A stretch of DNA of 64,000 nucleotides from Obrimoposthia wandeli (Eukaryota), in NCBI GenBank assembly GCA_977020255.1, contig CDROCS010002469.1, forward strand, positions 248,001 to 312,000, in the 5' to 3' direction. The first letter of the stretch is position 1. Each line of letters starts with the position of its first letter. The notes below the pieces were generated by a model, which made no database searches, was not told where the DNA came from, and was given only the letters and a program-made list of their open reading frames with translations. This document shows positions 6,115 to 40,473 of this stretch, piece after piece. The translations under genes were made by a program, and so were the position numbers.

Positions 6115-6190
6115 TGGTGGGCCGTGTAGGATTCGAACCTACGACCAATTGGTTAAAAGCCAACTGCTCTACCAACTGAGCTAACGGCCC
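6115..6190 (-). tRNA. tRNA-Lys (UUU)
   Basis: Reverse complement GGGCCGTTAGCTCAGTTGGTAGAGCAGTTGGCTTTTAACCAATTGGTCGTAGGTTCGAATCCTACACGGCCCACCA; 76 nt cloverleaf, TTT anticodon, encoded CCA. Confidence 0.98.
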
Positions 6191-16442: not shown

Positions 16443-17037
16443 TATTTATCCATCGCCATAATTTAAATTGATCAACCAAATAAAGTAGATAGCTAAATTG
16501 CAAAACAAACAAAATATAGGCCCAAAATGATAACCCAAACGATAAATTTGCTAAAGACCACATCTTAATCAGCGCCACTAACACCCCTATTAGAAAAACA
16601 TCGACCATTAACCAAGGTACCAACCTTTTAATCAATATAGCAACATAAGCTAAACGCTGCCCTTTTATGCCAAACTTTAAAGGTATTAACACCCGCAACA
16701 ATAATACTAAATACAATAGTGGGCATACTAAAGTAAGCAACAGCACCAGTGCTGCTAAAAAGTAATAATCCTGATTATATAATACTAAGGTTGCTTGAAT
16801 TAAAGAAATTTCACGGCTTTGGGCGTTGACTTCAAATGCGATAAAAACAAAATTATAAGAAAGAGCTAATGTCATTAAACTACTAAAAACGATAGCTAAG
16901 GCATAACCAAGGGCATTTGTATGTCCTCGTGTAATGGTATGTAAACACCTAGGACAACACCACTTATTATGTTTACCAATTTGGCTCGGTAATTGAATAA
17001 GAAGATCACAGCCACTACAGGCGATTTTTTTATTCAT
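16432..17037 (-). CDS. pqiA: PqiA family protein (N-terminal-half type)
   Basis: CSGCDLL...CPRC, WLMVDVFLIGVLVALIKM; overlaps the next pqiA half. Confidence 0.9.
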   Translation of the reverse strand: MNKKIACSGCDLLIQLPSQIGKHNKWCCPRCLHTITRGHTNALGYALAIVFSSLMTLALSYNFVFIAFEVNAQSREISLIQATLVLYNQDYYFLAALVLLLTLVCPLLYLVLLLRVLIPLKFGIKGQRLAYVAILIKRLVPWLMVDVFLIGVLVALIKMWSLANLSFGLSFWAYILFVLQFSYLLYLVDQFKLWRWINNAR

Positions 17038-17296: not shown

Positions 17297-18484
17297 TTAC
17301 CGACAAATGCGATTACGCCCTTGCTCTTTCGCTTTATACAATGCTATGTCAGCTGCTTTAAGTGGGCTAGTTTTCGTTCTAGTGGTAGCTACTCCACCAC
17401 TAATGGTAACAGATACTGTTTCGCCATTACCGCCGACGCCACGCTGATTACGCCCTTTTTTATTATTCTTAGTACGTTTTTTAGCACGCACTCTTAAAGT
17501 AGCCTGCTCTACTGCTAAGCGCACTTGCTCAAGGGATTCTTCTGCCATCTCTGTATCAATGGTCGGAAACAAAATACAAAACTCTTCTCCTCCATAGCGA
17601 TATGCCGTGCCACCTTTCACTTGGTTGATTTTCTGTGCCACCATACGCAATACTTGATCACCCACATCATGGCCATGTGTATCATTGAATTTCTTGAAAA
17701 AATCAATATCGAGCATGGCCGCCGTATAGTTTTTACCCAGCTTTACCATGCGCTCGTTTAGTGCTCTTCGCCCTGGAATCCCCGTTAGCTCATCGATATA
17801 AGCCATACTTAAAGAGCGTTTAAATAAGGCCATCACCAGCAACAACTGATTTAAAGCAACTAGTAAACTGAGCTCTATTTCATTCGCTGGTGGGAAAACT
17901 AACAACCAAGCTGAAAACACTAAACTGATTAACAAATAAGCATCAATTAATAAAGTTTGTACGAATAACTTAATCACTAAGTACAAAAAGCAAACACTAA
18001 ACACGGCCAGTGCCGGTATCGAAACGTTAATGCCCTGCACTGCAATATGCGGCCAATTGATAAGCTGATGAAATTCATCTGCTTTGAAAACGTAAGCTAC
18101 TGCTAGCAGCCCAGGTTGCCCAAAAATAAGCACGATGCGAAACAGCCCAGTAATACTGTATGTGCCGCGCTCTTTATAGAAAGCAATGAGCAACATATTA
18201 AGTGACATTAAGACCAGTGCTAATTGAATATAATGTGGGTTGGCAAAATCAAGCTTCAAAAACGTCCACACGGAAAGACTAACTAAACCGGCAAACAAAA
18301 TACGGCTGAAGTTAAAAAAACCAACAATTACAAATAGTAACCCACTGATAGCCAATGGTACCCAAGGAATAAAGTACTGCCACTGTTGTGGGATTAAATG
18401 ACTAAAAGGAAGTGAGTAAATAGCAGCGGCTATAAAAAGTATTGGCAAAAATAGTAAATTAATGGGCCTTATAAAATCAGACAC
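17297..18484 (-). CDS. Membrane-bound diguanylate cyclase (GGDEF)
   Basis: Multi-TM N-terminus; DELTGIPGRR, MLDIDFFKKFNDTHGH, RYGGEEF, ADIALYKAKEQGRN. Confidence 0.93.
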   Translation of the reverse strand: MSDFIRPINLLFLPILFIAAAIYSLPFSHLIPQQWQYFIPWVPLAISGLLFVIVGFFNFSRILFAGLVSLSVWTFLKLDFANPHYIQLALVLMSLNMLLIAFYKERGTYSITGLFRIVLIFGQPGLLAVAYVFKADEFHQLINWPHIAVQGINVSIPALAVFSVCFLYLVIKLFVQTLLIDAYLLISLVFSAWLLVFPPANEIELSLLVALNQLLLVMALFKRSLSMAYIDELTGIPGRRALNERMVKLGKNYTAAMLDIDFFKKFNDTHGHDVGDQVLRMVAQKINQVKGGTAYRYGGEEFCILFPTIDTEMAEESLEQVRLAVEQATLRVRAKKRTKNNKKGRNQRGVGGNGETVSVTISGGVATTRTKTSPLKAADIALYKAKEQGRNRICR

Positions 18485-23793: not shown

Positions 23794-24035
23794 TACATCA
23801 ATTTTTTAGATAACGGTATAAATAATTTTCACAATAAAATCCTATAAAGCGGCTGCTTAAGTCTCAATGTTGCTGCATCGTTTACATACAACTCTGCCCA
23901 CAACACTTGAACAAAGTAATTGATTACCTTATTAATCATATTTGAAACATTCAAGTTCTATCATTCATTAACTAGCTGCGCCATCATGCTAAACTTCAAC
24001 ATTCACTTCAAACCTAAATTTTGATAAGAGACACC

Positions 24036-26447
24036 ATGAAATTACGTATTTTGGGCTGTAATGGCGGAATAGGACATAAATTAAGGACTACTTCTTTTTT
24101 AGTTAATAACCGTGTATTACTTGACGCTGGAACAGGGGTCGGAGAATTGACACTTGATGAAATGTTATCGCTTCGTCATGTATTGTTAACACATGCCCAT
24201 TTAGACCACATTGCTGGTTTAGCGCTGATGTTTGCCAGTATTTATGAAAACATGCTCGAAGCTGTGACTATTTACGCGCCAGAAGATGTATTAGCCATCT
24301 TAAGAAAGCATTTATTTAATTGGCAACTTTGGCCTGACTTCAACCAACTACCTGATCAAGACAACGCTACTCTTAAGTTTCAAGCGGTTGAAGAAGACAC
24401 AACTATTACCATAACACCTGGCTTTACGATAACGCCTATTGCATTAAGTCACACCGTTAAAAGTGTTGCCTATATCATTGAGCATAATGATGTAAAACTC
24501 TGTTTTTGTGGTGATACAGGGCCCACAAATAAAATATGGCGAACCATTAATAATTTAGAAGGTGTAGACCATCTTATTATTGAAGCATCTTACCCTAATG
24601 AACAAGCTGACTTAGCGCAGCAATCGGGTCATTTCACACCAAAATTACTCGCGAGCGATCTCAATAAACTCAATCAAAAACCAAGTGTTCATATTCAACA
24701 CATGAAACCAGGTTATGAAGAGTGCCTCAGTTTACAATGTAAACAGGAATTACAAGGTTTCAACTTAAATATTTTAGCTCGATGTGACGTTGTTGAACTA
24801 GCAAAAGGTGGTCAATTCAGCATTATCAGTACAACAAAGGACTATAAGAATATTGAGCAAAACTTGTCAAAATTAACCGATATGGCGATCTCTTTATCGA
24901 CGGAACAAGACAATGACCTATTACTTGAAAAAATCCTCAACAGCGCCAAAGAAATAGCCAATTCTGATGGTGGCACAATTTACACAGTAAAAGATGAACA
25001 ATTTTTACAAATGGACATTGTGAAAAATGATTCTATGGGCATCTCTTTAGGAAAAAGTAATTCCAATAAATCCAACTTTGCTCCTCTGCCGCTTTATTTA
25101 GAGAATGGTGAGCCTAATAAGGAAAACGTGGTCACTTGTGCTATTCATGAAGATATCATCATTGATATTAAAGATCGTCATGCAGACAGCCATTATGATT
25201 TTAGCGGAGCGCAACGCTTTGATGAAAGTACAGGTTATAATTCTATATCTTTCTTAACCATCCCCATGAAAGATCACAAAGGAGACATGATTGGCGCCCT
25301 TCAACTAATCAATGCCCTAGATAGTAATGGTAAAGTTATTCCCTTTAGTCATCAAATATCGACCTTAATAAAGGCCTTAGCTTCACAGGCTGCTATTACA
25401 TTGACGAATAAGAACCTTATTGATGAACTTGAATTACTCTTTGAATCCTTCATCAAATTACTCGCGGGTTTAATCGACGAAAAATCACCTTATACGGGCG
25501 GTCATTGTCGTCGAGTCCCAGAGCTAACGATCATGCTTACAGAGGCAATCCATGCGACACCAAATGGGCCTTTAAAAGACTTCTATATGACAGAAGATGA
25601 TCGTTATGAGCTAAAAATAGCGGCTTGGCTACATGACTGTGGAAAAATCACTACCCCAGAGCATGTTGTTGACAAAGCCACTAAACTTGAAACTATTTTT
25701 GACCGTATTCACCTTATTGATGCTCGTTTTGAAACGATCAGGCGCGATCTGGAAATCTCACTTTTAAAACAGCAACTCACCGCTTCACAAAATAATGTAT
25801 CAGTCAGTAATGACATAATTGAGCACTACAAAAAATCACTCTCAAGAGTTTCTATCGATCAAGCCTTTATTCAACAGCATAACTCAGGCGGAGAATTTAT
25901 GACGGTAGAAAATCAAGATCAAGTCATAGAGATTGCAGAGCGCTATCAAATTACTGACTACCAAGGTGAAAAGAAGAGTATCTTATCTGCTGATGAAATT
26001 GAGAATATGCAAATTTCACGAGGCACTTTAAATGCTGCTGAGCGCGAAATAATCAATAAACATATCATCGTCACCATTGATATGCTAACAGCTCTTAAAC
26101 TACCTAAACACCTTAAAAACGTTCCCGAAATTGCCGGAGGTCATCACGAACGGATGGACGGAAAAGGCTATCCTTACGGCCTAACAAAAGACCAAATGTC
26201 AGTTCAAACGAGAGCAATGGGCATAGCTGATATTTTTGAAGCACTGACCGCTTCGGATCGACCCTATAAAGAAGCAAAAACTATCACTGATTCGTTAACG
26301 ATTATGAAGCGTATGAAAGATACGGGTCATATTGATGCTGATATTTTTGACATATTTGTCCGCAATGAAGTTTATTTAAAATATGCTGATAGATTTTTAA
26401 CTTCGCAACAAAATGATCAAGTCAACAAAGATGATTTTCTTGATTAG
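24036..26447 (+). CDS. Fusion of MBL-fold 3',5'-cyclic nucleotide phosphodiesterase, GAF and HD-GYP phosphodiesterase
   Basis: N-terminal LGCNGG, DAGTG, THAHLDH, GDTG, GHFTP; central GAF (DGGTIY, LTIPM, IGALQLIN); C-terminal TGGHCRRV, WLHDCGK, HHERMDGKGYP, DIFEALT, RPYK. Confidence 0.92.
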   Translation: MKLRILGCNGGIGHKLRTTSFLVNNRVLLDAGTGVGELTLDEMLSLRHVLLTHAHLDHIAGLALMFASIYENMLEAVTIYAPEDVLAILRKHLFNWQLWPDFNQLPDQDNATLKFQAVEEDTTITITPGFTITPIALSHTVKSVAYIIEHNDVKLCFCGDTGPTNKIWRTINNLEGVDHLIIEASYPNEQADLAQQSGHFTPKLLASDLNKLNQKPSVHIQHMKPGYEECLSLQCKQELQGFNLNILARCDVVELAKGGQFSIISTTKDYKNIEQNLSKLTDMAISLSTEQDNDLLLEKILNSAKEIANSDGGTIYTVKDEQFLQMDIVKNDSMGISLGKSNSNKSNFAPLPLYLENGEPNKENVVTCAIHEDIIIDIKDRHADSHYDFSGAQRFDESTGYNSISFLTIPMKDHKGDMIGALQLINALDSNGKVIPFSHQISTLIKALASQAAITLTNKNLIDELELLFESFIKLLAGLIDEKSPYTGGHCRRVPELTIMLTEAIHATPNGPLKDFYMTEDDRYELKIAAWLHDCGKITTPEHVVDKATKLETIFDRIHLIDARFETIRRDLEISLLKQQLTASQNNVSVSNDIIEHYKKSLSRVSIDQAFIQQHNSGGEFMTVENQDQVIEIAERYQITDYQGEKKSILSADEIENMQISRGTLNAAEREIINKHIIVTIDMLTALKLPKHLKNVPEIAGGHHERMDGKGYPYGLTKDQMSVQTRAMGIADIFEALTASDRPYKEAKTITDSLTIMKRMKDTGHIDADIFDIFVRNEVYLKYADRFLTSQQNDQVNKDDFLD

Positions 26448-26756
26448 CCTCAACAATGACACACGCCATGATTGACGTACTTGAACCGAAACCTGGAAAA
26501 CAGGCAGACGACCTAATAAAGACTATTAAACACTGAACTGGCAGCATTTACTTAGACCGAGAGGAACGCCATATTTTAAATGTCTTCTCGCAAGGGCTAT
26601 TCTTTTGCTAGCATCTGTTTGAATCAACAGCCTTCATCTGCAAACTCTTACATCCATTTTATTTACGGCGTATTTTCATAGCGGGGTAATCTTTTATACT
26701 GCTCTTCAAATCAGCTTGTCCATTCCCTCTTTTCGACAAAAATCAGCATCTGATAT

Positions 26757-27005
26757 CATTAATGTCCGGCTAAATTTTTGTTGTTCTTTAACTCATTGAT
26801 TTTACGTTAGCCACAAGTGTTATTCGTCTGAAAAAATCCAATTTACCATGCTAGAAAACCACAAATCAATGAGTAAAGAGCTTACACTTTTTAATCGGAC
26901 AGCAATGTTTACCACAAGTATTATTGGCCGAAAAATCCAATTAACAATGCTAGAAATCCACAAATCAATGAGTAAAGAGTTTAGGCTTTTTAACCGGCAG
27001 CAATG
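26757..27005 (-). repeat. Family A element (26757-26907) followed by a tandem partial copy (26912-27005)
   Basis: Both segments end in CACAAATCAATGAGTAAAGAG...TTTTTAA.CGG..CAGCAATG. Confidence 0.85.
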
Positions 27006-27193
27006 ATTTGATATAGCTAATTTATTACGTTTTAAATTCAAACTACCAGACCATGTACCTTGTATTTTTCATAGCAAACTCCGATTATTAGCGCCTTAGA
27101 ACTGCCAGCGTATAACAGCGTTTATATTTGGAGAAAGCGACTATTTGAATCGCTAAAGGCTTTCTCCTTAACAATTGATCAATCACTATGCAC

Positions 27194-28546
27194 TTATAAA
27201 TTGTAGCGCTTGAAATGACTTCGTACCGAAATATCAGCCACTGTTCTAGTTAAATAGTAACTAACTACATACTCATGAAAGTTGTCTTCGAAAATTGTTT
27301 CATTTTTAATACTTTTATAGTCACGTTTAGTAATATCGTAAGAATCAGTAATATTTTTAGTGATAACCTTGCCATTAATATCGATCACAATTTTTATCTC
27401 ATGTTTAACCATGTCGGGATTTATGTCTAGTAATCGGCTAATCAAATCCAACTTTATCGATGCTTTATATTCAACTTTTTTACCATCAATGAAATGATAG
27501 TATGCAAACGATTCACCTTTATCTGAAGAATGCATATTGCCCTCTTCAATCCCTTGGCGGTGATTTAATGAAGGAAGTCTAACCTCCTTGAAAACTGGTT
27601 CTAAAAAGTTACTCCCACGTTCAACCTCAACCTCAGCATAATAACGAGTCGACGCACTCACATCGAAATGCAACACATGACGTCCCTTTGAAATATCAAT
27701 CAAGGATTTTCTAGCATCATCAGCTTTAGACCCTTCTAATACCACTAACTGCGCTCCATCTATCAGCATTCTATCTGGATAAAACCTGACAAATGAAACC
27801 TCTGTTGACTGATACATAAAGTAGCCAATAGCGAGTAAAAATCCCGCAATTATTAACAGAACACTTGAAAATAATTTAGGGACCGCGCGTTTTTTATCAC
27901 CTTTTTTTGGAGGAGACGGCTGTGCGTAATTGGAGTCAACCACTTCATAAATTTCAATTGGATTTGGAATACCCTTTAGGAAATAACTACCGTGAAGCTT
28001 CCAAATTAAACTATCATTACTCGCAAGCCAACCTTTGGCACTATCAAACACCGGATAACTTAAATATATTTGACCACCATCAGCCAGACTCTCAATACGT
28101 GATGCGCGATTCACATGACGTCCGAACACGTCAGCCTGAATTTTGTCATCAATCGTCACTTGCCCCATATGCAGGCCAATGCGGACGGCTATACTTTCAA
28201 ATTCGTCATTAGATTCATTAAATTCTTTAATTTGTTGCTGAATCATTAAAGCGCGTTCTACAGCAGCGCTCGGCTCTGTGAATATTGCCATAACGGCATC
28301 ACCGATGAACTTCACTACTAACCCAACATTATTTTCTTCAATAATATCGCGCAGAATTTTATCGTGAATTTCGCGTAATTTAATCGAATACTCTTCACCT
28401 TTTTGCTCCGTTATTAAAGTGAAATCTTTTATATCCGTAAACATTGTTGTGATAACGGCGGTGTTCTTTTGCTCTAAGTATTTTCTAACATTTTGAATCT
28501 CGTTACTCGAGATATTCAACTCTTCAAACTCATTTTCAGTGGACAT
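27194..28546 (-). CDS. Class III adenylate cyclase: N-terminal catalytic domain, one TM, C-terminal extracytoplasmic domain
   Basis: MFTDIKDFT, VKFIGDAVMA, VRIGLHMG, ADVFGRHVNRASR; TM LFSSVLLIIAGFLLAIGYFMY. Confidence 0.9.
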   Translation of the reverse strand: MSTENEFEELNISSNEIQNVRKYLEQKNTAVITTMFTDIKDFTLITEQKGEEYSIKLREIHDKILRDIIEENNVGLVVKFIGDAVMAIFTEPSAAVERALMIQQQIKEFNESNDEFESIAVRIGLHMGQVTIDDKIQADVFGRHVNRASRIESLADGGQIYLSYPVFDSAKGWLASNDSLIWKLHGSYFLKGIPNPIEIYEVVDSNYAQPSPPKKGDKKRAVPKLFSSVLLIIAGFLLAIGYFMYQSTEVSFVRFYPDRMLIDGAQLVVLEGSKADDARKSLIDISKGRHVLHFDVSASTRYYAEVEVERGSNFLEPVFKEVRLPSLNHRQGIEEGNMHSSDKGESFAYYHFIDGKKVEYKASIKLDLISRLLDINPDMVKHEIKIVIDINGKVITKNITDSYDITKRDYKSIKNETIFEDNFHEYVVSYYLTRTVADISVRSHFKRYNL

Positions 28547-28623
28547 TCGCGTTCCTAAAATAACGATAGTGTAACTGGTATATCAAAATCCAAAAAAGAC
28601 TACAACAACAAACATTTATTACT

Positions 28624-28854
28624 TAGTGCTCATCCTGAAACGGGGTCGTCACGAGTACCCAAACACCTTTCTTAGGCACTTAGCAATACGCTCGTTCCAT
28701 TTAACGACCGCACATTCACCTTCAAGAAGTTCGTGAATTCTAGAAATAAATATTTCGAACCAATAGAAGTTCAACTCAATGCTAGCAATCCGTCTGGTGG
28801 ATCAGCTGGGTAATACCTAATTTACTTTCTCTAAATAGTCTTGTTAGCTCATTA
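28624..28854 (+). ncRNA. Structured non-coding element, copy 1 (IS110 left-end/bridge-RNA-like, tentative)
   Basis: Shares TAGTGC(T)CATCCTGAAACGGGGTCGTCA, an ATCCGT..TGGAT hairpin, TA.TACCT and AGCTCATTA in the same order with 40300-40473. Confidence 0.45.
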
Positions 28855-29069
28855 TGTTAATAAACAGGTATCACTCCAGCAATAGCCATTTTCCTCTTAC
28901 AAAAGCAAAAATCAATCCCATTTTATCGTTCGTACTACTAGCTTAAAATTAACTAACGACCTACAATATTTAGATAATAACCTTATATAAATATTTAGAC
29001 TTTGAACGCTCCCTTTTGTATATGCTAATTGAAGTTTATTTCCACTCTCCGTGTTATAGGAGTTAAAGA

Positions 29070-31826
29070 TTGCAGTCTAATTTTACTAAAAGTAATAAAA
29101 AGATGTTATTTACGATCTTTATGCGATCTGTTTTAGCTGTTATCTCTCTTCTTTTGGCTTCTTTGTTTCTCAGTTTATTTGGGTTGAAGGAAGCTAATAG
29201 TCTTTTACTTCAGAATCAATTCACCCGTGCTGAAAAGGACGTATCAAATGAGCTGGTGATAATCGCAGTTGACGATGAAAGCTTAGCTTATCTAAATTCT
29301 TGGCCCTGGCCTAGAGGAGTCTACGCGAACGTTTTGGAGCAACTAGAACTGCATAATGTTCGTAGAGTAGCCTTCGATATTGACTTTAGTTCCTCATCTA
29401 ACTTTAAGCAGGACGTTTTATTTTCTCAATCTTTAGATGATGCAAAGTTTGATATTGCTCTAGGGGCATATGTTTCGAAACACCCAGAGACAGGAGGTTT
29501 TCGAGAGCATAATCCTATTCCTCTATTTGCAGAGCATGCAGTTGCAGCCAATGCGAATATTGAATTAAATAGCTTGGGTAGGGTTGAGCAATATTACGGG
29601 CTATTTAATAACAAGCAGCAAACTCTAGCAGCCTTCCTGGCTAATTTAGAAAAAGAGCGAGAAAGTCCGTATTTTATAGATTATAGCTATCCTTGGCAGA
29701 ATATACCGATGTACTCGGTGAAAGATCTATTGACAAAAAATGTTCCAATTGGAAGTCTGCAAAATAAAGACATACTGATAGGCTCTACAGCTATAGTACT
29801 AGGAGATAATTTTAATACGCTTTCTGGTAATACAATACCAGGCGTATATTTACATGGCCTTGCCTATGAAACGATTATTAAGGAACAGCAGTTTACTAAG
29901 CTTAGCCTTAAATTTATTGATTTTCTCTCCATATTAGTAGTTGTTTTTATTTCACTCGTATTTAATACACAAAAAACCATGCGTTTATTTGTCGTCACTC
30001 TGGCAGGCTACAGTGCAATTTTTTATACAGTAGCTTATCTTCATGTACACGAATATGTGATTTTTGAAGCAGCTAAGCTTCTTGTAAGCTTAGTATCTAG
30101 CTCTGTCGTCTTTTTTTGTTATGCATTTTATTTAAAAACCACCTCCTTTTACAAAGAAAAAAATAAGAAGAACTACCATAAAGCGATCTCCTCCAAGATT
30201 ATAAAAGGTAATGTAAATGCCATTTTTGTGGTAGATATTGCAGGTAATATTATTATCTCTAACGAAAAAGCTAAGAAAATGTTTCGTTTAAATGATAATG
30301 ATTCAAACTTATTTAAATTCTTTGAGCATGCTAAGGAGTTTATCCAAAAATATGATGCCGGTGATAAAGAACAGTTGAATTATCATAAACTACACCATTG
30401 TACAGAAGATACGTATTTAGACCTTGAAGTTTTTGTTAATAAAGTTTCGTTTGTTACTAGTCGATATCAAGGAATTATCGAAGAAAAACACGAACTGTAT
30501 AGTTTTATTATTATTGATGAAACAGAAAAAATTAAAGCGCTTGAGGATATGAACCAATCAAGGATTGAACTTCTGGATATTAAATTTAATGATCCCGTTG
30601 CAAAAATCTCAAATCGATTTAGCTTTGAAAACTATTTAACTAGTTTTATCGAAGAAGGAAATAGGCATAGCACAACAGTCATTCTATTAAGGTTAAATTC
30701 GCTGCAAGAAATAAACTATATTTATGGGAGACTTACTGGTAATAGTGTTCTTTACCATACGGCGCAACTGTTAGTGAGCGAAGCTGCTGGCAAAGCAAAA
30801 GTATTTAAGTTTTCCAGTGCAACATTTGCCTTAGTGTACACAAATCAAAACGAACCTACAGTTGAAAGAGAAATGCAGCGATTATATTTCCTGTTTACAA
30901 ATCCGCTGCAAATACAGAATCAAAATCTTCTTATTTCAGTATCGCTTGGGAGTTCTCTTTCTCCAATGCATGGGAGTGAGCCTCTGCAGATCATCTCCTA
31001 TGCAGAAGCCTCTCTTGACTATGCCCATACTAATCGGTTTATAAACTACTTTTTTTACGATGAACACACATTGATGAAGTCTAAACAGAGAGTAACATTG
31101 AAGCAAGAGCTTTACCGAGCCATCAAGCAACGAGAATTTGTTCTTTTCTATCAGCCTCAGCTCTGCTTGCAAAGTGATCGCGTAATCGGATTAGAAGGCC
31201 TGTTACGTTGGAAAGACCCAATTAAAGGTCTGCGTTATCCTAATGAATTCATTGGAGCGTTAGAAGATTTTGGTTTCATGGGGGAAATGGGACAACTAAT
31301 CATTGATATGGGATGTGAAGATGCAACTAAGTTACCTGATCGTATTAAAATTGCTATTAATGTATCCCCTGTACAGTTCTTAGAATCAGACTTAGAACAA
31401 TTGTGTATCACTAGCTTAGAAAAGTCGGGTCTGGAGCCTAGCAGATTAGAACTTGAGATTACTGAAAGTATGTTGATGGACGATATTGAGAATGTTTCAC
31501 GTGTTTTACATAAGATCAAAAAACTTGGTATTACTATCGCAATGGATGACTTTGGTACAGGCTACTCAAGCTTACAATATTTATCCCAGCTCCCGTTTGA
31601 TAAATTAAAAATTGACCGCTCATTCTCTAAAAACCTCCTGTCTAACTCACAAGCTAAAGACATCATGGTATCAATAATCCAATTAGGAAAAGCTGCAAGT
31701 AAAACAATTCTAGTTGAAGGTATTGAAAATCAAGAGACTGCGATTTTCCTTGCTGCGAACGGTTGCGATTTTGTCCAAGGTTATTTATACGGGAAGCCAA
31801 AACCTATCAGTGAATATTTATCATAA
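29070..31826 (+). CDS. CHASE2-TM-PAS-degenerate GGDEF-EAL c-di-GMP phosphodiesterase
   Basis: CHASE2 motifs IIAVDDESL, WPWPRGVY, AFDIDF, PGVYLHG; GGDEF site reads SSATF; EAL domain FYQPQ, EGLLRW, LEITES, DDFGTGYSSL, LKIDRSF, EGIE, QGYLYGKP; AGGAG RBS before TTG. Confidence 0.92.
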   Translation: MQSNFTKSNKKMLFTIFMRSVLAVISLLLASLFLSLFGLKEANSLLLQNQFTRAEKDVSNELVIIAVDDESLAYLNSWPWPRGVYANVLEQLELHNVRRVAFDIDFSSSSNFKQDVLFSQSLDDAKFDIALGAYVSKHPETGGFREHNPIPLFAEHAVAANANIELNSLGRVEQYYGLFNNKQQTLAAFLANLEKERESPYFIDYSYPWQNIPMYSVKDLLTKNVPIGSLQNKDILIGSTAIVLGDNFNTLSGNTIPGVYLHGLAYETIIKEQQFTKLSLKFIDFLSILVVVFISLVFNTQKTMRLFVVTLAGYSAIFYTVAYLHVHEYVIFEAAKLLVSLVSSSVVFFCYAFYLKTTSFYKEKNKKNYHKAISSKIIKGNVNAIFVVDIAGNIIISNEKAKKMFRLNDNDSNLFKFFEHAKEFIQKYDAGDKEQLNYHKLHHCTEDTYLDLEVFVNKVSFVTSRYQGIIEEKHELYSFIIIDETEKIKALEDMNQSRIELLDIKFNDPVAKISNRFSFENYLTSFIEEGNRHSTTVILLRLNSLQEINYIYGRLTGNSVLYHTAQLLVSEAAGKAKVFKFSSATFALVYTNQNEPTVEREMQRLYFLFTNPLQIQNQNLLISVSLGSSLSPMHGSEPLQIISYAEASLDYAHTNRFINYFFYDEHTLMKSKQRVTLKQELYRAIKQREFVLFYQPQLCLQSDRVIGLEGLLRWKDPIKGLRYPNEFIGALEDFGFMGEMGQLIIDMGCEDATKLPDRIKIAINVSPVQFLESDLEQLCITSLEKSGLEPSRLELEITESMLMDDIENVSRVLHKIKKLGITIAMDDFGTGYSSLQYLSQLPFDKLKIDRSFSKNLLSNSQAKDIMVSIIQLGKAASKTILVEGIENQETAIFLAANGCDFVQGYLYGKPKPISEYLS

Positions 31827-31972
31827 ACTGCATCTCTAGTTTCTTCGCTCGTGCTACCTATTTTGCAATATACTATTTATCAACCCTTTAGCAAGAAATT
31901 CATCAAACCGCTACTTTTGTGACTTGATCAAAAGTATAAATTTTACGAAAATTCAAAGCCTATTTAGATATT

Positions 31973-33508
31973 CTATTTGTTTTTGTTTTTGTTCGAATTA
32001 CTGCCACCTGCATTACTGTTTCCACTGTTGCTGCCTGCGTTGCTAGTTCCGCTATTACCACCTTCGTTGCTACTTCCGCTGCTACCAGCTGCATTGCTGT
32101 TTTCGCTGTTACCACCTGCGTTGCTACTTCCGTTGTTACCACCTGCGTTGCCACTTCCGCTGTTACCACCTGCATTGCTACTTCCGCCGTTGCCGCCTGC
32201 ATTGCTGTTTCCGCTGTTACCACCTGCATTGCTATTTCCGCTGTTACCACCTGCATTACTGTTTCCGCTGTTACCACCTGCATTACTGTTTCCGCTGTTG
32301 CCGCCTGCATTGCTGTTTCCGCTGTTACCGCCTGCATTGCTACTTCCGCTGTTACCACCTGCATTGCTACTTCCGCCGTTGCCGCCTGCATTGCTGTTTC
32401 CGCTGTTACCACCTGCATTGCTATTTCCGCTGTTGCCGCCTGCATTGCTATTTCCGCTGTTACCACCTGCATTACTGTTTCCGCTGTTGCCGCCTGCATT
32501 GCTGTTTCCGCTGTTACCACCTGCATTACTGTTTCCGCTGTTACCACCTGCATTACTGTTTCCGCTGTTACCACCTGCGTTGCTGTTTCCGCTGTTGCCG
32601 CCTGCATTGCTGTTTCCGCTGTTACCACCTGCGTTGTTTTTTCCGCTGTTTCCACCTGCGTTGTTGTTCCCGCTGTTTCCACCTTCGTTGTTGTTCCCGC
32701 TGTTTCCACCTGCGTTGTTGTTCCCGCTGTTTCCACCTTCGTTGTTGTTCCCGCTGTTTCCACCTCCGTTGTTGTTCCCGCTGTTTCCACCTCCGTTGCT
32801 ACTTCCATTGTTTCCGCTTTTACCACCTGCGTTGCTGTTTGAATTGTATTGTTCACTGCCCAGATTAGTAATTTCAATTTGATCAAGGTAAGTATCGGCT
32901 AAACTTTTAACATCACTTCCGAAGTATTGGTTTAAATTTTTAGCCTTCTGAACACTTGTTGCTTTTAAATCTGTTGAATTATTTAGAGAAACTGCGGTTT
33001 TTTCTCCAGCCTTTATACTAATAACAGATTTGCTTTCCTTACTCGATACTTTAACTAGTCCTTCAAAAACTTGGACAGAAAAAGAGGCATCAGATACTCC
33101 CGTAGCAAAAGTCGTACCTTTTACAAGGGCTGCTCCGAAACGTGATCTTACCTTGAAGTGGTTTTTAGTGCCTTTTTTAACCGAGAAAAGCACAGTGCCA
33201 AGTTTGTGGAAAAAGCTAGTAGATTCTTCTGTATTTAATCTATTTGGAAGAATGAGCTCGCTATTTGCTTCAACAATAAGCGACTCTTGATCTCTGATTA
33301 AAAAAGCTCGGCTCCTGTACTTTGTTTTTAATATATCGCCCGGGGATAGTGTGTCTCCAGCTGTGACAAGCTTTGCGAAATATCCAGGGCGCAAAATCGA
33401 GACCTTACCTTTGACTTCAACTATTTCCCAGTTTAATGATGACGCTGAAGTATGAGTGGCTGGGAAAAAAGCGAGCAGATATAAAACAATTAGTTTGATC
33501 CATTTCAT
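31973..33508 (-). CDS. Secreted FecR-domain protein with a long (A/G/E)GGNSGNSN repeat tail
   Basis: AGGAG RBS; signal-like MKWIKLIVLYLLAFFPATHTSA; FecR-like GDTLSPGDILKT, GTVLFSV, VKGTTF, VQVFEGLVKV; low-complexity tail. Confidence 0.85.
   Translation of the reverse strand: MKWIKLIVLYLLAFFPATHTSASSLNWEIVEVKGKVSILRPGYFAKLVTAGDTLSPGDILKTKYRSRAFLIRDQESLIVEANSELILPNRLNTEESTSFFHKLGTVLFSVKKGTKNHFKVRSRFGAALVKGTTFATGVSDASFSVQVFEGLVKVSSKESKSVISIKAGEKTAVSLNNSTDLKATSVQKAKNLNQYFGSDVKSLADTYLDQIEITNLGSEQYNSNSNAGGKSGNNGSSNGGGNSGNNNGGGNSGNNNEGGNSGNNNAGGNSGNNNEGGNSGNNNAGGNSGKNNAGGNSGNSNAGGNSGNSNAGGNSGNSNAGGNSGNSNAGGNSGNSNAGGNSGNSNAGGNSGNSNAGGNSGNSNAGGNSGNSNAGGNGGSSNAGGNSGSSNAGGNSGNSNAGGNSGNSNAGGNSGNSNAGGNSGNSNAGGNSGNSNAGGNGGSSNAGGNSGSGNAGGNNGSSNAGGNSENSNAAGSSGSSNEGGNSGTSNAGSNSGNSNAGGSNSNKNKNK
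32000..32840 (-). repeat. 27-bp coding tandem repeat, about 30 units
   Basis: Plus-strand unit CCACCTGCATTGCTGTTTCCGCTGTTA with synonymous and minor variants. Confidence 0.95.
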
Positions 33509-33762
33509 CCCGAACTCCTAAACAACATATTCAACATAATAAATTGAAATTTTATTATATAGTAAATTTATATTGGCTTAAATGTAGTAGCCGTGAAAAT
33601 AAACTAATCAGCAATACTGAATATTTAGGCAAGATTAAACCCAGTAAAGTCATCATGTATTAGAAACCAATTCTTAATTAACAACTGTTCGTTGTTAGCT
33701 ATTAAAATATTAAATTTAAATATTTGATAACTAATTGTTTTCTAGATTATTTTTAATGCTCA

Positions 33763-33960
33763 CTAAATACGATGAAAGCCTCGGGGTAATACATGTCATT
33801 AGAAGCGCTGAATAGACGGACCTGTCACGAGGCTTATAGCGTTGTACCCATTTAAGTCGGTAATCTTTCCAGCGAAACTTAAGGAAACAGTGATTAAGTA
33901 CCAGAAACTATCCATGTATAACTTTGTTGGTTAGCTCCACTGATATACCCCGTTTCAGCA
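33763..33960 (-). pseudogene. IS91-family (Y2) transposase remnant
   Basis: Frameshifted peptides KFRWKDYR (33880-33857), IQRF and HVLPRGFHRI (33795-33766) match C-terminal IS91-type motifs. Confidence 0.65.
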
Positions 33961-33964
33961 CATA

Positions 33965-34493
33965 AGTGGAGGTCGGTGCTTCAATAATGGTGCCATCTAT
34001 TGATGCTTCCATCTTTCATCAACAGCCCTGACTCTTCAAGAAATTGGCTGATGGCATCGAATATCTGTCGTCCTAAATCATGCTTCTCCAATAGGTGGCG
34101 AAATTTCATGACCGTTGTATGATCTGGTATAGATCGATCTAAAGACAAGCGATAGAAGCGTCGCATTGACGCTATTTCATAGAGTGAATCTTCGGTCGCA
34201 GCATCACTTAGGTTATACTATTGCTGTATACCGATACAGTTAACCCGTAATATTGATTCAAGTGGGTAAGGTCTGCGACCGTTACCTGCTTTGGGATAGT
34301 GAGGCTCTATCAAAGCTATAAGTCTAACCCAAAGCATAAGAGCTTCCATTTTTTCCAGAAATACTTCTTTTCGAGTTTTGTAGTGATTTTTTCTTAGATC
34401 TAGCACTGAAAATCCCAGCTGCTGTTCCATCGATATTACCTTAGCCTGATTAAGCAGCCATTATTTCATACTGGGGACTTAATCGCATATTCC
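33965..34493 (-). mobile_element. Truncated IS5-family (InsH-like) element
   Basis: Left end GGAATATGCGATTAAGTCCC; peptide TRKEVFL..PKAGNGRRPYPLE..QQ*YNLSD..YEIASMR..IPDHTT, then frameshifted [12 protein letters not shown]; truncated after the first catalytic Asp. Confidence 0.9.
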
Positions 34494-34634
34494 CCAGTTA
34501 TAAAACACTCAGGAATATTATCAACTAACTCAGACCTCATGATCATTAATTGAAGTTAGTGTTCGCTGAATTATTTGAGTAAGGTATTAAGAAAATGATT
34601 TATATATAAATCATGTTTAATTATTATTTGTAAT

Positions 34635-35417
34635 TTACTTTTCGTATTTCTTTAAAATTCTAAGCATTAACGGTTTGTTTTCACGGATTTCTGTAATAGC
34701 CTTCCAAATTCGATTTCGTTGCGCAGCAGGTAACTTTCCCATTTTTGAGAAAATTAAAAAATAAGATTTTGAACGTAGTGGTAATTGATGAATTTTAAAT
34801 TTACCTTTAAATTCAATATCTTGGTTAAAGTGCTCAGCAAGAAGTGGATTCATAGCAATGGAAGCAGTTCTATACGCTAACAACATGTTAATGTTTCCCC
34901 GGTTTTTTACATTTTCTATAACTTCTATTCCTTTCTCTCGAAGATAACCTCCAATAGCCGCCCCGAATGCCACATTGACAGGTTGAGGAATCTTAGTTAA
35001 ATCACCATCAAATTCATAAGGTTCACCTTCTCTAGTTAATAAAACATATTCAACCTGGTCAATTCTCCAATTAGATTTTATAGCAGTAGCTGCATCAGGG
35101 GGATAATGAGCATATATAGCTCTCTCATCTTTGTAAGACGCTGAGAGAAGTACTTCTACACTGCCAAATCCTAAATTTGCGAGGCAACGCTTCCAAGGGC
35201 AAGGGATAAATTTAAATTCGTATTTTAATGCCGTTAAAGCTTCTTTGACAATATCAACATGAATACCAATAGATTCATCCTCATTTTCATAAGTATAAGG
35301 AAACCAATCATTATCAGTTTGGATCTCTAAATTTTTCGCCTGTGTAGCAACAGGAATAAGCATAAAAGTTATTAGAATAATTAATAAAGATCTGTTCACT
35401 ATATTTTCCACTATCAA
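34635..35417 (-). CDS. Periplasmic substrate-binding protein (SBP family 3-like), orphan
   Basis: Signal peptide, WFPYTY, GIHVDIVKEAL, PWKRCL, YLIFSK-like end. Confidence 0.8.
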   Translation of the reverse strand: MIVENIVNRSLLIILITFMLIPVATQAKNLEIQTDNDWFPYTYENEDESIGIHVDIVKEALTALKYEFKFIPCPWKRCLANLGFGSVEVLLSASYKDERAIYAHYPPDAATAIKSNWRIDQVEYVLLTREGEPYEFDGDLTKIPQPVNVAFGAAIGGYLREKGIEVIENVKNRGNINMLLAYRTASIAMNPLLAEHFNQDIEFKGKFKIHQLPLRSKSYFLIFSKMGKLPAAQRNRIWKAITEIRENKPLMLRILKKYEK

Positions 35418-36361
35418 TGTTAATGGACTCTCAGCTTAATCTAAAAGGATTCATAAGTCCCTAGTTTCTGGGCAGTTTAAATTTTACAAATTTTATTTCC
35501 TTTAAGTGATTTTCGCTAACTATTTGATTAGTAGATGTTTTGGATTATAGGAAAACTCAATGCAATTGAACCCATCTGCTTGGCTTAATCTCTGGTTTTA
35601 AATATTTGATGCTTGATTCACTGTTTTAAATAATAGCTCTAGAGTAAATTGAGCTTAATTGCCTAACAGACACTCTCGCCCATTCTTCACGTTGTCGTTG
35701 AATTTTTTCTATGCGACTTCACCCCAGCTTCTTAGAAAGAAATCGTAAGCAACCACCGTGCACGATAGCGTCTAATAAAACATTTAAGACATCCACTTTT
35801 CAAACTCAACAGAAACCATTTTTATTCAATACCTTACATGATGCAGGGCTCTAATAATCAGCCCCACTGAGTGAAAAATTACTTCACTTTGCTGATACTG
35901 CAATCTCGTACATTCGCTACCAAGTTGCACAACCCTTTGCATTCTAGCCACAGCTTGGCAGTCGATTATTGAAGTAATGCACAGGAAATTTCGAAAAGAA
36001 AATGCGCTACAAATGCTACTAATGAGTGATCAATAGTATGTTTCAAAAGGAGGTATTAACGGTAGATAGACTTACAAAGGTCAGTGCCACGCATGACAAA
36101 AAGTGATTTGGTTTTACTTTTTAGATGCATCTTATAACAGACTACAAGAAAGAAGCTGTGACCGCCTACTCTTGTTAAAGTGCTAAGCTACTTACACCCA
36201 AAATGCCCACGATTGAAGTTATTGTGACTGATAATAACGAACCCAACAAAACATATTCTATTAGGCTATGATTTTTAGAATTGTTTAGCTCTCCGAAAAG
36301 ATAAAGGACCACTTTAAATCCTGTATTTAAACACTCAGCGCCTAATCTTGAGTTAAACTCT

Positions 36362-36485
36362 TTTTTAATCTTTCCTCTGTGCCCTCTGTGGTTAAACAAA
36401 TCTTTTAAAAGCTTTTTACCACCGAGGCACAGAGACGCTGCGCTACACAGAGATAAATCAAAATACTGAACAAGATCAAAATCTT
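36362..36485 (-). repeat. Single copy of the 144-bp hairpin unit (family C)
   Basis: Reverse complement CTCTGTGTAGCGCAGCGTCTCTGTGCCTCGGTGGT...ACCACAGAGGGCACAGAGGAAAGATT matches the 44.4-45.2 kb units. Confidence 0.85.
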
Positions 36486-36694
36486 CTATATTCTTCTGTG
36501 GTGCTAAAACCTGATAATTACACTAAAAGTGGCTATCCTGTAGATTTATCGCTATTGATCTAAAGATGAAAATAAAAAGTAAACTGCCCACGTTTAGCCT
36601 ACCACTTGTAAATAATACTCAATTTACAACCTTTTCAGAAATCCATTCACTAATGAAATATCACCGTATATCTAGCCTTTCATAAATTAAAGAC

Positions 36695-36726
36695 AAAAAA
36701 AAGCCTGAATAAATTCAGGCTTTTTT
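36695..36726 (-). terminator. Intrinsic (bidirectional) terminator of groESL
   Basis: AAAAAAAAGCCTGAAT-AA-ATTCAGGCTTTTTT, 20 bp after the groEL stop. Confidence 0.9.
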
Positions 36727-36746
36727 ACTATCTAGGAGGGGTTGGC

Positions 36747-40059: not shown

Positions 40060-40299
40060 AATCTACATTAGAAAATTTGATTAAAATTATAAAGCAACCT
40101 TTTAACTTGTCTAGTTTAAAAGAAGCAGTAGCTTTAAATTTTGCGGATTTAAATATTTATTAATTAAAATCAATTATTTAAGCCCTAGGCTGCCTGTACG
40201 TTTTTTGTACGCGAAAAGATAGTAAAATCCACTTGCCGCAAAACCCGTGAAAACGGCACCAGTATTCATTCAATATTAGTGCTATCTTTTTCAGTTAGT

Positions 40300-40473
40300 T
40301 AGTGCCATCCTGAAACGGGGTCGTCAGCGGAAACGTCCCACAAGTACTCTCTATTGGGCGTTTAGTTCATTCAAACAACTAAATATATGAGTAGATGCGT
40401 TAGTGTGAGCAGTTCGCAGTGACATCCGTTTCTGGATACCTAGTTATACCTCCCTACTCTGGCAAGCTCATTA
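40300..40473 (+). ncRNA. Structured non-coding element, copy 2 (IS110 left-end/bridge-RNA-like, tentative)
   Basis: AGTGCCATCCTGAAACGGGGTCGTCAGCGGAAACGTCCC; stems GGG..CCC, TTTAGTT/AACTAAA, TACTC/GAGTA, ATCC/GGAT; homologous to 28624-28854. Confidence 0.5.

What the first reader, a model, noticed from the sequence alone, without database searches (positions are those of the whole stretch)
24036..33508. Self-contained cAMP / c-di-GMP signalling island
Four adjacent genes in two convergent pairs supply an adenylate cyclase, a cNMP phosphodiesterase fused to HD-GYP, a CHASE2-EAL phosphodiesterase and a secreted FecR-domain protein. They are bracketed by MITEs, a bridge-RNA-like element and IS91/IS5 debris, which suggests acquisition or reshuffling as an accessory block. 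CHASE2 sensors are commonly encoded beside FecR-domain proteins and cyclases. Here the parts are rewired: CHASE2 drives an EAL domain and the cyclase has its own different sensor. The prediction is a circuit that makes and clears cAMP while lowering c-di-GMP in response to envelope cues.
Basis: partly seen in the sequence, partly recalled or inferred. Interest (0 to 1): 0.75.

Follow-up and report, generated by a model that had tools for sequence, protein, structure and literature searches.

The report
Two adjacent second-messenger gene pairs
The four signalling genes are real, but they are two separately inherited gene pairs (a cAMP cyclase with a triple-domain phosphodiesterase, and a CHASE2 c-di-GMP phosphodiesterase with its FecR partner) that an 8-kb insertion placed side by side, not one self-contained island.

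Summary
All four genes and their domains are confirmed. A (24036-26447) is a class-II cNMP phosphodiesterase fused to GAF and HD-GYP. B (27194-28546, minus strand) is a class III adenylate cyclase, then one membrane helix, then an unannotated all-beta domain. C (29070-31826) is CHASE2, a degenerate GGDEF and an intact EAL. D (31973-33508, minus strand) is a secreted FecR protein with a 27-bp x 29.5 repeat tail.

The "one island" reading fails. In relatives about 80-84% identical in DNA, A and B sit together without C and D; in one of them they lie directly beside groESL. Window 28606-36746 (C, D, an IS5 remnant, a solute-binding gene) replaces 176 bp there. C and D recur as a pair elsewhere without A or B.

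Each pair is conserved on its own. A-type proteins sit next to a class III cyclase in all six contexts read. In Betaproteobacteria the same parts are separate genes in a recurrent operon: CHASE2-cyclase, MBL phosphodiesterase, GAF-ATPase, GAF-HD-GYP. CHASE2-GGDEF-EAL genes sit next to a FecR gene in four of four informative contexts.

Likely function: cAMP synthesis, cAMP-gated c-di-GMP hydrolysis and cAMP removal, plus a separate envelope-sensing c-di-GMP phosphodiesterase. One MITE and the IS5 remnant are confirmed; IS91 and a bridge RNA are not. This is a variant of known cluster types, of moderate interest.

The parts
24036..26447 (+). Gene A, 803 aa from the ATG at 24036. MBL-fold class-II cNMP phosphodiesterase (about 24036-24806), GAF (about 24915-25403), and HD-GYP with a conserved insert of about 110 aa (about 25443-26390).
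   Evidence: Pfam gives PDEase_II 71 bits, GAF 33.8 bits, HD 42 bits and HD_5 128.6 bits. Homologues start at MKLRILGC. PDB matches are PmGH and V-cGAP3 for HD-GYP, yeast PDE1 for the MBL part, and PDE5/CyaB2 for GAF. The HxHLDH, HD and HHExxDGxGYP motifs are conserved in the alignment; the HD and HHExxDGxGYP positions are invariant across all 18 rows.
26755..27008 (.). MITE-like dispersed repeat of about 150 bp (terminal inverted repeats TGTCCGG.../...CCGGACA) with a partial tandem duplication, in the A-B spacer.
   Evidence: Self-blast, TRF and the alignment of copies. It is absent from the shorter A-B spacer of L005 (317 against 736 bp between the aligned blocks).
27194..28546 (-). Gene B, 450 aa. 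Class III adenylate cyclase domain (about 27932-28471), one TM helix (about 27812-27877), and a C-terminal all-beta extracytoplasmic domain (about 27212-27802).
   Evidence: Pfam Guanylate_cyc 78 bits. Best PDB match is the Ma1120 adenylyl cyclase. D38, K79, D83, D139, N146 and R150 are conserved. AlphaFold models reach pLDDT 87.5 and 94.3. The C-terminal domain has no PDB fold match at E<=0.001.
28606..36746 (.). Segment of about 8.1 kb, present in the window but replaced by 176 bp in the closest relative with context (L005). It carries C, D, the IS5 remnant, an SBP_bac_3 gene and 1.3 kb of non-coding DNA.
   Evidence: blastn of L005 against the window and the boundary check.
29070..31826 (+). 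Gene C, 918 aa. CHASE2 (about 29160-29957), TM region, a weak PAS-like stretch, degenerate GGDEF (about 30588-31025) and an intact EAL c-di-GMP phosphodiesterase (about 31104-31799).
   Evidence: Pfam. The alignment to MorA 4rnh shows SSATF in place of GGDEF. It also shows the EAL motifs EGL, N, ELEITES, DDFGTGYSSL, KIDRSF, EGIE and QGY intact. The PAS hit is below threshold.
31973..33508 (-). Gene D, 511 aa. Signal peptide, FecR domain (about 33050-33319), and an N/G/S-rich tail of about 300 aa encoded by a 27-bp x 29.5 tandem repeat (32004-32800).
   Evidence: Pfam FecR 39 bits, TRF, and 50% identity to the FecR partner of the Rs1 homologue of C.
33965..34378 (-). IS5-family transposase remnant, with broken ORF fragments over about 33800-34430.
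   Evidence: DUF772 hit. blastn at 65-69% identity to annotated IS5 transposase genes on plasmids.
34635..35417 (-). SBP_bac_3-type periplasmic binding protein gene. It lies inside the inserted segment and is not seen next to C/D homologues elsewhere.
   Evidence: Pfam; contexts.

Best explanation
The region holds two independent two-gene signalling modules that became neighbours through an insertion.

Module 1 (A+B) is a cAMP unit.
- B is a membrane adenylate cyclase. Its C-terminal domain, placed outside the cytoplasm by the single-helix topology, presumably sets its activity (inferred).
- A is a three-part terminator and transducer. Its GAF domain is proposed to bind the cAMP made next door. 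Binding would switch on the HD-GYP domain, which hydrolyses c-di-GMP. The N-terminal class-II phosphodiesterase domain would destroy cAMP, making the response self-limiting.

Module 2 (C+D) is a periplasmic FecR-domain protein working with the CHASE2 domain of C. Together they would control C's EAL c-di-GMP phosphodiesterase. The GGDEF domain of C is catalytically dead and at most regulatory.

Both modules lower c-di-GMP and so share one nucleotide pool. Nothing shows that they are wired to each other.

Shown here: gene presence, domain identity, catalytic motifs, synteny, and conserved pairing of each module. Inferred: ligand of the GAF domain, direction of regulation, the signals sensed, and all enzyme activities.
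For: Synteny:
- L005 (about 84% DNA identity over A) has A, B, groEL, groES and fxsA in a row, with no C or D.
- L009 (about 81% DNA identity over A) has A+B in a different place.
- The Osedax symbiont Rs1 genome has C+D between SLAC1 and his genes, with no A or B.
- C and D have diverged from their Rs1 counterparts to a similar degree, 47% and 50% identity.

Pairing of A with a cyclase:
- It holds in six of six contexts: the window, L005 and L009 with the B type; L007, L010 and L011 with a CHASE2-cyclase.
- Of 80 GAF-HD-GYP loci from named genomes, 30 have a class III cyclase, 35 a separate MBL phosphodiesterase gene, and 47 a T2SSE-type ATPase; 31 of those 47 ATPase ORFs also gave a GAF-region hit. 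Twenty-six loci have all three.
- Pfam confirmed the order CHASE2-cyclase, PDEase_II, GAF-T2SSE, GAF-HD-GYP in Chitinimonas viridis.
- A is therefore a Rosetta-stone fusion of two operon neighbours.

Product of the cyclases: B has the Lys/Asp pair and the CHASE2-cyclases the Lys/Thr pair. Both are adenylate-cyclase signatures.

The GAF of A and the GAF of the operon ATPase are related, at 26% identity and E 2e-8.

Pairing of C-type genes with FecR: an adjacent FecR-domain gene in four of four informative contexts, one of them (L175) with a FecR score just below Pfam's cut-off.

Catalytic motifs are intact.
Against: - No enzyme activity, ligand binding or expression was measured.
- The GAF domain lacks a clear NKFDE motif (my reading of the sequence). 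It matches cNMP-binding GAFs only weakly, at E 1e-6 to 2e-5, so its ligand could be something else.
- HD-GYP domains can prefer 3'3'-cGAMP, and V-cGAP3 is the second-best PDB match.
- B-type cyclases at about 50% identity are not next to A-like genes. The A+B pairing is therefore young and could be circumstantial, although it holds in three different genomic contexts.
- Clusters that combine all four functional types do exist (L010; Campylobacterota, PMC9239204). A functional link between the two modules cannot be excluded.
Confidence: 0.6

Rival explanations
1. One reading: all four genes form one integrated, co-acquired circuit. In it, FecR/CHASE2 envelope sensing, cAMP synthesis and turnover, and c-di-GMP hydrolysis are functionally coupled.
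For: Clusters with the same four functional types exist. L010 has an A homologue, a CHASE2-cyclase, TpsB/TpsA and FecR. Campylobacterota have a CHASE2 adenylate cyclase, a cAMP phosphodiesterase, a FecR-domain protein and a TPR protein (PMC9239204). A's lineage ancestrally pairs with a CHASE2 protein, and in the window a CHASE2 protein again sits beside it. Every c-di-GMP-related catalytic domain here is a phosphodiesterase.
Against: The four-gene arrangement was found nowhere else. The closest A+B loci lack C+D. The closest C loci lack A+B. C+D lies in an insertion of about 8.1 kb with an IS5 remnant and an unrelated binding-protein gene. The two pairs are separate convergent transcription units. 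C's best database relative is only 57% identical, while A has a 95% relative.
Confidence: 0.2
2. A does not work on cAMP and c-di-GMP as proposed. Either its HD-GYP domain is a 3'3'-cGAMP or pGpG phosphodiesterase, or its GAF domain senses another ligand. The MBL domain might then process linear dinucleotides or RNA ends rather than cNMP.
For: V-cGAP3 is a strong PDB match to the HD-GYP part, at E 1.9e-19. The MBL part also scores against RNase Z models at 80 bits, far below their cut-off. The GAF ligand is unknown for PmGH (bioRxiv 10.1101/2021.11.05.467447).
Against: The MBL part passes the PDEase_II threshold. It shares the HxHLDH and HLFN..WPD motifs with yeast PDE1. It is persistently linked to adenylate-cyclase genes. 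The best HD-GYP match is PmGH, a c-di-GMP phosphodiesterase.
Confidence: 0.15
3. A+B is an anti-phage, Pycsar-like pair: a pyrimidine cyclase with an Apyc1-like nuclease acting as self-immunity.
For: B gives weak PADLOC PycC hits, at most 46 bits. Precomputed Pfam annotation lists PF23023 Anti-Pycsar_Apyc1 on the MBL part of A homologues.
Against: No effector gene with a cNMP-binding domain fused to a TM or TIR domain is present. B has the Lys/Asp adenylate-cyclase residues. A gives no PADLOC hit. The PycC and Apyc1 hits are what a shared fold would produce. The partners in relatives are CHASE2 sensor cyclases inside signalling operons.
Confidence: 0.03

Closest known systems
[quoted passage not shown]
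   Same: A GAF domain directly upstream of a complete HD-GYP domain. The proposed logic is the same: cAMP as input, c-di-GMP hydrolysis as output. PmGH is the best solved-structure match to A's HD-GYP part.
   Different: A carries an extra N-terminal class-II cNMP phosphodiesterase domain. It also has a conserved insert of about 110 residues between the HD and HHE..GYP motifs. The sequence relationship to Tlr0485 itself was not tested, because no referenced sequence was available.
Campylobacterota cluster of CHASE2 adenylate cyclase, cAMP phosphodiesterase, FecR-domain protein and TPR protein (Mo et al., mBio 2022, PMC9239204)
   Same: The same functional types are clustered: a class III adenylate cyclase, a cAMP phosphodiesterase, a FecR-domain protein and a CHASE2 sensor.
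   Different: In the window CHASE2 sits on a GGDEF-EAL protein, not on the cyclase. The cyclase has a different C-terminal sensor. No TPR gene is present. The phosphodiesterase is fused to GAF-HD-GYP. The parts arrived as two separate pairs.
Betaproteobacterial operon: (STK, PP2C, FHA), CHASE2-cyclase, MBL phosphodiesterase, GAF-T2SSE ATPase, GAF-HD-GYP (found here in Chitinimonas viridis, Leeia and many MAGs)
   Same: The GAF-HD-GYP part is about 50-55% identical. The MBL phosphodiesterase and an adenylate cyclase are linked to it.
   Different: In the window the MBL and GAF-HD-GYP parts are fused. The GAF-ATPase is absent. The cyclase is of the B type and convergent rather than co-directional. 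I found no description of this operon in the searched library.
Burkholderia BiofilmReg operon: response regulator, LysM-FecR periplasmic protein, CHASE2 histidine kinase (PMC5192318)
   Same: A secreted FecR-domain protein encoded next to a CHASE2 membrane sensor.
   Different: The output here is an EAL phosphodiesterase rather than a histidine kinase. D has no LysM domain and carries a long repeat tail.
MorA-type GGDEF-EAL proteins (P. aeruginosa, PDB 4rnh)
   Same: Best structural-sequence match for C's GGDEF-EAL tandem, E 3e-70, with all EAL catalytic motifs shared.
   Different: C's GGDEF lacks the GGDEF motif and the upstream Asp residues. The sensor is CHASE2.

Membership tests
Class III adenylate cyclase (gene B) | Cyclase homology domain (PF00211) above the gathering score | tested here: met
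   78.2 bits against a cut-off of 21.9. The fold matches Ma1120 with TM 0.79-0.91 normalised to the target.
Class III adenylate cyclase (gene B) | Two metal-binding Asp, the substrate-specifying Lys plus Asp/Thr, and the transition-state Asn and Arg | tested here: met
   D38, D83, D139 and N146 are invariant, and K79 and R150 nearly invariant, in 38 family members. They align to the equivalent positions of Ma1120 and of the CHASE2-cyclases.
Class III adenylate cyclase (gene B) | cAMP synthesis | not testable with these tools
   Needs an enzyme assay.
Class-II 3',5'-cNMP phosphodiesterase (N-terminus of A) | PF02112 above threshold and the HxHLDH metal motif | tested here: met
   71 bits against 23.7. 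THAHLDHIAGL and HLFNWQLWPD align to yeast PDE1 4ojv.
HD-GYP c-di-GMP phosphodiesterase (C-terminus of A) | HD motif, HHExxDGxGYP motif and the further metal-binding His/Asp residues | tested here: met
   H495, H538, D539, K542, H681, H708, H709, E710, D713, G716, Y717, P718 and D737 are invariant in alignment A1. HD_5 scores 128.6 bits. The match to PmGH has E 1.3e-27.
cAMP-sensing GAF (Tlr0485/CyaB2-like) | GAF domain that binds cAMP | tested here: inconclusive
   The GAF domain is present at 33.8 bits. Matches to the PDE5 and CyaB2 GAFs are weak. I did not see an NKFDE motif in the sequence. Linkage to cyclase genes supports a cNMP ligand only indirectly.
EAL c-di-GMP phosphodiesterase (gene C) | Catalytic motifs: E(x)L, N, ExxE, DDFGTGYSS, KxD, EGVE, QG | tested here: met
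   All are present in the alignment with MorA. EAL scores 206 bits.
Active diguanylate cyclase (GGDEF of C) | GG(D/E)EF active-site motif | tested here: not met
   SSATF aligns to GGDEF of MorA. The upstream LDLDRF..IND becomes LRLNSL..INY.
FecR-CHASE2 two-gene sensor module (C+D) | A secreted FecR-domain gene adjacent to the CHASE2 gene in independent genomes | tested here: met
   Seen in the window, L002, L174 and L175. In L175 the FecR score is 21.4 bits, just under the cut-off of 24. The literature gives precedent (PMC5192318, PMC9239204).
Genomic island or mobile accessory block (all four genes) | Moves as a unit; bounded by repeats, an integrase or a tRNA; absent as a block from relatives | tested here: not met
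   Only the C-D-IS5-SBP segment is missing from the relative. A+B stays in place. No boundary repeats were found. There is no integrase. The only tRNA is at 6115-6190.
Pycsar defence system | Pyrimidine cyclase plus a cNMP-activated TM or TIR effector | tested here: not met
   Only weak PycC hits, at most 46 bits. There is no effector, and no other PADLOC hit among the five genes scanned (A-D and the SBP gene).

The most novel reading that the evidence does not exclude
A is a cAMP-gated, dual-messenger phosphodiesterase. A single polypeptide would read cAMP through its GAF domain, hydrolyse c-di-GMP through its HD-GYP domain, and erase its own cAMP signal through a class-II phosphodiesterase domain.

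It would be the fused form of a widespread operon that, as far as the searched literature shows, is undescribed. In that operon a CHASE2 adenylate cyclase feeds two GAF-domain effectors, a T2SSE-type ATPase and an HD-GYP enzyme.

In the window's lineage the CHASE2-cyclase was replaced by a cyclase carrying a structurally unmatched all-beta domain on the far side of its single membrane helix.
Probability: 0.4. Interest if true: 0.6.

Novelty: new variant of a known kind. Interest (0 to 1): 0.4.

Why it matters
Cross-talk between cAMP and c-di-GMP is known from only a few biochemical cases, such as Tlr0485, Lcd1 and Bd1971. The fusion in gene A, together with the operon it derives from, gives genomic evidence that an adenylate cyclase, a class-II cAMP phosphodiesterase and a GAF-HD-GYP enzyme work as one unit across many Proteobacteria.

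It also offers a compact protein for testing cAMP-gated c-di-GMP hydrolysis with built-in signal termination. The B-type cyclase adds a conserved sensor domain with no family annotation and no structural neighbour.

For the scan, the main lesson is that thematic adjacency of signalling genes does not make an island. Comparison with relatives split this block into two units.

Tried and rejected
- The first genome-contig scan, with C as a single protein, found no relative.
- The metagenome scan with the B-family alignment mostly returned generic class III cyclases. Only three were true family members, and none had informative neighbours.
- A fold search with full-length B only recovered cyclase domains. 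The C-terminal domain had to be modelled alone, and it then had no significant PDB neighbour.
- I looked for IS91, IS110 and bridge-RNA signatures in intergenic ORF fragments and with Rfam. Nothing turned up beyond the IS5 remnant. The non-coding stretch 35418-36746 has no plasmid or IS similarity.
- I rejected a Pycsar reading.
- I rejected a recent domain swap as the origin of C. Its nearest relatives share the full architecture, and my C-family CHASE2 profile scores cyclase-linked CHASE2 domains only weakly, at 33-53 bits against about 350.
- P0130 looked like an unfused 536-aa version of A in the Osedax symbiont Rs2. It is a start-site call; the locus has an intact 808-aa ORF.
- The large representative-protein search was not used, because no claim here rests on the absence of relatives.

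Full report
**What is there**

The interval 24036-33508 contains four long ORFs in two convergent pairs. I call them A to D.

- **A (24036-26447, + strand).** The mechanical ORF starts at a TTG at 24021, but homologues begin at the Met encoded at 24036.
  - Pfam scores above threshold: PDEase_II/Lactamase_B_2, GAF, and HD plus HD_5.
  - The N-terminal MBL part aligns best to yeast PDE1, the class-II cAMP/cGMP phosphodiesterase. The shared motifs are THxHLDHIxGL and HLFN...WPD.
  - The C-terminal part matches the HD-GYP structures PmGH (E 1.3e-27) and V-cGAP3.
  - The HD and HHExxDGxGYP motifs and the other metal ligands are invariant across 18 homologues.
  - A conserved insert of about 110 residues separates the HD and HHE motifs. 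This explains the split Pfam hit.
- **B (27194-28546, - strand).** It has an N-terminal class III cyclase domain closest to the Ma1120 adenylyl cyclase.
  - The two metal-binding Asp, the Lys/Asp substrate pair and the Asn/Arg pair are conserved in 38 family members.
  - The AlphaFold model (pLDDT 87.5) shows the cyclase domain, one long helix at residues 224-245, and an all-beta C-terminal half.
  - Modelled alone, that half reaches pLDDT 94.3. It has no PDB neighbour at E<=0.001 and no Pfam match.
- **C (29070-31826, + strand).** Its order is CHASE2, membrane segments, a sub-threshold PAS-like stretch, GGDEF and EAL.
  - Aligned to MorA, the GGDEF motif reads SSATF and the upstream Asp residues are lost.
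  - Every EAL catalytic motif is intact.
- **D (31973-33508, - strand).** It has a signal peptide and a FecR domain. Its tail of about 300 residues consists of NAGGNSGNS units encoded by a 27-bp repeat in 29.5 copies.

**Surroundings**

The flanks are core chromosome. On the left lie rlmD, a pseudouridine synthase, a PfkB kinase and a Dabb protein. On the right lie groEL, groES and fxsA. Farther out are mfd, pqiABC, nadA, queC, a tRNA-Lys and a DUF520/YajQ-family gene.

The mobile-element claims hold only in part:
- A MITE-like repeat of about 150 bp with terminal inverted repeats sits between A and B, at 26755-27008. Three other copies occur in the window.
- An IS5-family remnant lies at about 33965-34378.
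- I found no IS91 or IS110 trace in 77 intergenic ORF fragments.
- No Rfam family matched apart from the tRNA.

**Is it one island?**

No. The best relatives of A are 79-95% identical.
- In L005 (about 84% DNA identity over A), the order is esterase, A, B, groEL, groES, fxsA.
- blastn shows that window 28606-36746 (C, D, the IS5 remnant, an SBP_bac_3 gene and 1.3 kb of non-coding DNA) replaces 176 bp of L005.
- L009 (about 81% DNA identity over A) carries A+B in yet another context, beside a Tn7-like element.
- C has no close relative. Its best matches are 57% and 47% identical.
- In the Osedax symbiont Rs1 genome, the 47% homologue of C is convergent with a FecR gene that is 50% identical to D. 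That pair lies between SLAC1 and his genes, with no A or B nearby.

The four-gene arrangement was seen nowhere else.

**Each pair is conserved on its own**

*C with FecR.* Two more distant CHASE2-GGDEF-EAL genes also have an adjacent FecR-domain gene. These are L174 and L175 (Marinobacter), at 27% and 24% identity to C. With the window and L002 this makes four of four informative contexts; in L175 the FecR score is 21.4 bits, just below Pfam's cut-off of 24. FecR beside CHASE2 is also documented for a Burkholderia histidine-kinase operon (PMC5192318) and for Campylobacterota cyclase clusters (PMC9239204).

*A with a cyclase.* All six contexts read have a class III cyclase next door.
- The B type is convergent with A in the window, L005 and L009.
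- A CHASE2-cyclase is co-directional with A in L007, L010 and Leeia (L011).
- L010 additionally has TpsB/TpsA and a FecR gene.

*The wider family.* A scan of species-representative genomes with the A alignment returned 80 GAF-HD-GYP loci, mostly from Betaproteobacteria. I searched them with profiles built here.
- 30 loci have a class III cyclase within the fetched flanks.
- 35 have a separate MBL phosphodiesterase gene.
- 47 have a T2SSE-type ATPase; 31 of these ATPase ORFs also gave a GAF-region hit.
- 26 have all three.
- Among the 55 loci with at least 3 kb on both sides, 27 have a cyclase, and 24 of these are CHASE2-cyclases.
- Pfam confirmed the order STK, PP2C, FHA, CHASE2-cyclase, PDEase_II, GAF-T2SSE ATPase, GAF-HD-GYP in Chitinimonas viridis.

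Gene A is therefore a fusion of two genes that are operon neighbours elsewhere. A tree of the GAF-HD-GYP part gives three results:
- The window's fused clade is nested within unfused proteins of about 536 residues.
- The Leeia and P0149 fusions lie elsewhere in the tree, so fusion happened at least twice.
- Within the window's clade, the basal members pair with a CHASE2-cyclase and the crown members (the window, L005, L009) pair with the B type. This points to one partner replacement.

B-type cyclases at about 50% identity, and three metagenomic family members, are not next to A-like genes.

**Mechanism**

Both partner cyclase types carry adenylate-cyclase residues: Lys/Asp in B and Lys/Thr in the CHASE2-cyclases. 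The operon thus encodes a cAMP maker, a class-II cNMP phosphodiesterase, and two proteins whose only sensory domain is a related GAF (26% identity, E 2e-8).

[quoted passage not shown] This is from Enomoto et al. 2020, as cited in PMC8846402, PMC10124867 and bioRxiv 10.1101/2021.11.05.467447.

I therefore propose the following sequence:
1. B makes cAMP under control of its C-terminal domain, which the single-helix topology places outside the cytoplasm.
2. cAMP binds the GAF domain of A.
3. The HD-GYP domain of A then hydrolyses c-di-GMP.
4. The MBL domain of A removes cAMP.

C+D would act separately, as a FecR/CHASE2 envelope sensor driving an EAL phosphodiesterase. All activities, the GAF ligand and the input signals are inferences. 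The GAF domain shows no clear NKFDE motif and only weak similarity to known cNMP-binding GAFs.

**Comparison with what is known**

The closest described systems are:
- the GAF-HD-GYP proteins Tlr0485 and PmGH;
- the Campylobacterota cluster of CHASE2 adenylate cyclase, phosphodiesterase, FecR protein and TPR protein;
- the FecR-CHASE2 kinase operon of Burkholderia.

CHASE2-GGDEF-EAL is a common architecture, so its presence is not a rewiring.

The searched library contains no description of an MBL-GAF-HD-GYP fusion. The HD-GYP census does not contain the word 'lactamase'. Only one unrelated paper holds both 'HD-GYP' and 'metallo-beta-lactamase'. I also found no description of the betaproteobacterial operon. 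Absence from that library is not proof of novelty.

**Verdict**

The enzymatic inventory and the general prediction stand.
- The 'self-contained, co-acquired island' and the 'rewired parts' do not stand.
- The region is a new variant of known kinds of second-messenger gene clusters. Its most interesting piece is the triple-domain phosphodiesterase A and the conserved operon from which it derives.

Noticed in passing
window 44361-45174 and 36363-36485: A 144-bp unit forms a tandem array of 5.6 copies at 44361-45174, and a solitary copy sits in the non-coding stretch upstream of the groEL terminator. The solitary copy folds into a long hairpin (-38 kcal/mol, z -3.3).
   Followed up: partly
window 35418-36746: A stretch of 1.3 kb has no ORF of note, no Pfam hit, no Rfam hit and no similarity to plasmid records. 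It lies inside the inserted segment.
   Followed up: partly
window 15780-17037: PqiA is split into two overlapping ORFs (15780-16442 and 16432-17037), each with one PqiA domain. This could be a frameshift or a genuinely split gene.
   Followed up: no
window 27212-27802 (C-terminal domain of B): A conserved all-beta domain of about 200 residues, found across a roughly 450-residue cyclase family. Named members come from Methylococcales, Spirochaetia, Cloacimonetes, Desulfobacteraceae, Planctomycetota and Brevinematales. It has no Pfam family and no PDB fold neighbour. Only its first 77 residues or so resemble a small domain in the RtkS-PpkA complex 9k1u.
   Followed up: partly
L081 5608-7971 (Chitinimonas viridis) and 46 other loci: A GAF-T2SSE (GspE/PilB-like) ATPase is encoded between the MBL phosphodiesterase and the GAF-HD-GYP gene in the betaproteobacterial operon. 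This suggests a cAMP-controlled secretion or pilus ATPase. It is absent from the window.
   Followed up: partly
L172 4104-7350: A B-type cyclase 50% identical to B is divergently adjacent to an MshEN-T2SSE ATPase. This is a second case of a cyclase next to a T2SSE ATPase.
   Followed up: no
window 31960-32886 and 31977-32882: Two long ORFs (308 and 301 aa) in other frames, one on each strand, across D's 27-bp repeat. They are by-products of the repeat, not genes.
   Followed up: yes
window 17297-18484: A further GGDEF-domain protein (395 aa) is encoded about 5.5 kb upstream of A. It is the only potential diguanylate cyclase near the block, and its motif was not checked.
   Followed up: no
window 28619-28651 and 40295-40326: A 33-bp sequence is shared at 94% identity. 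One copy lies at the left edge of the inserted segment and the other in the AT-rich spacer after fxsA.
   Followed up: no
L008 9185-11611: The database protein P0130 ('Osedax' symbiont Rs2, 536 aa) under-calls the gene. The locus holds an intact 808-aa ORF equivalent to A.
   Followed up: yes
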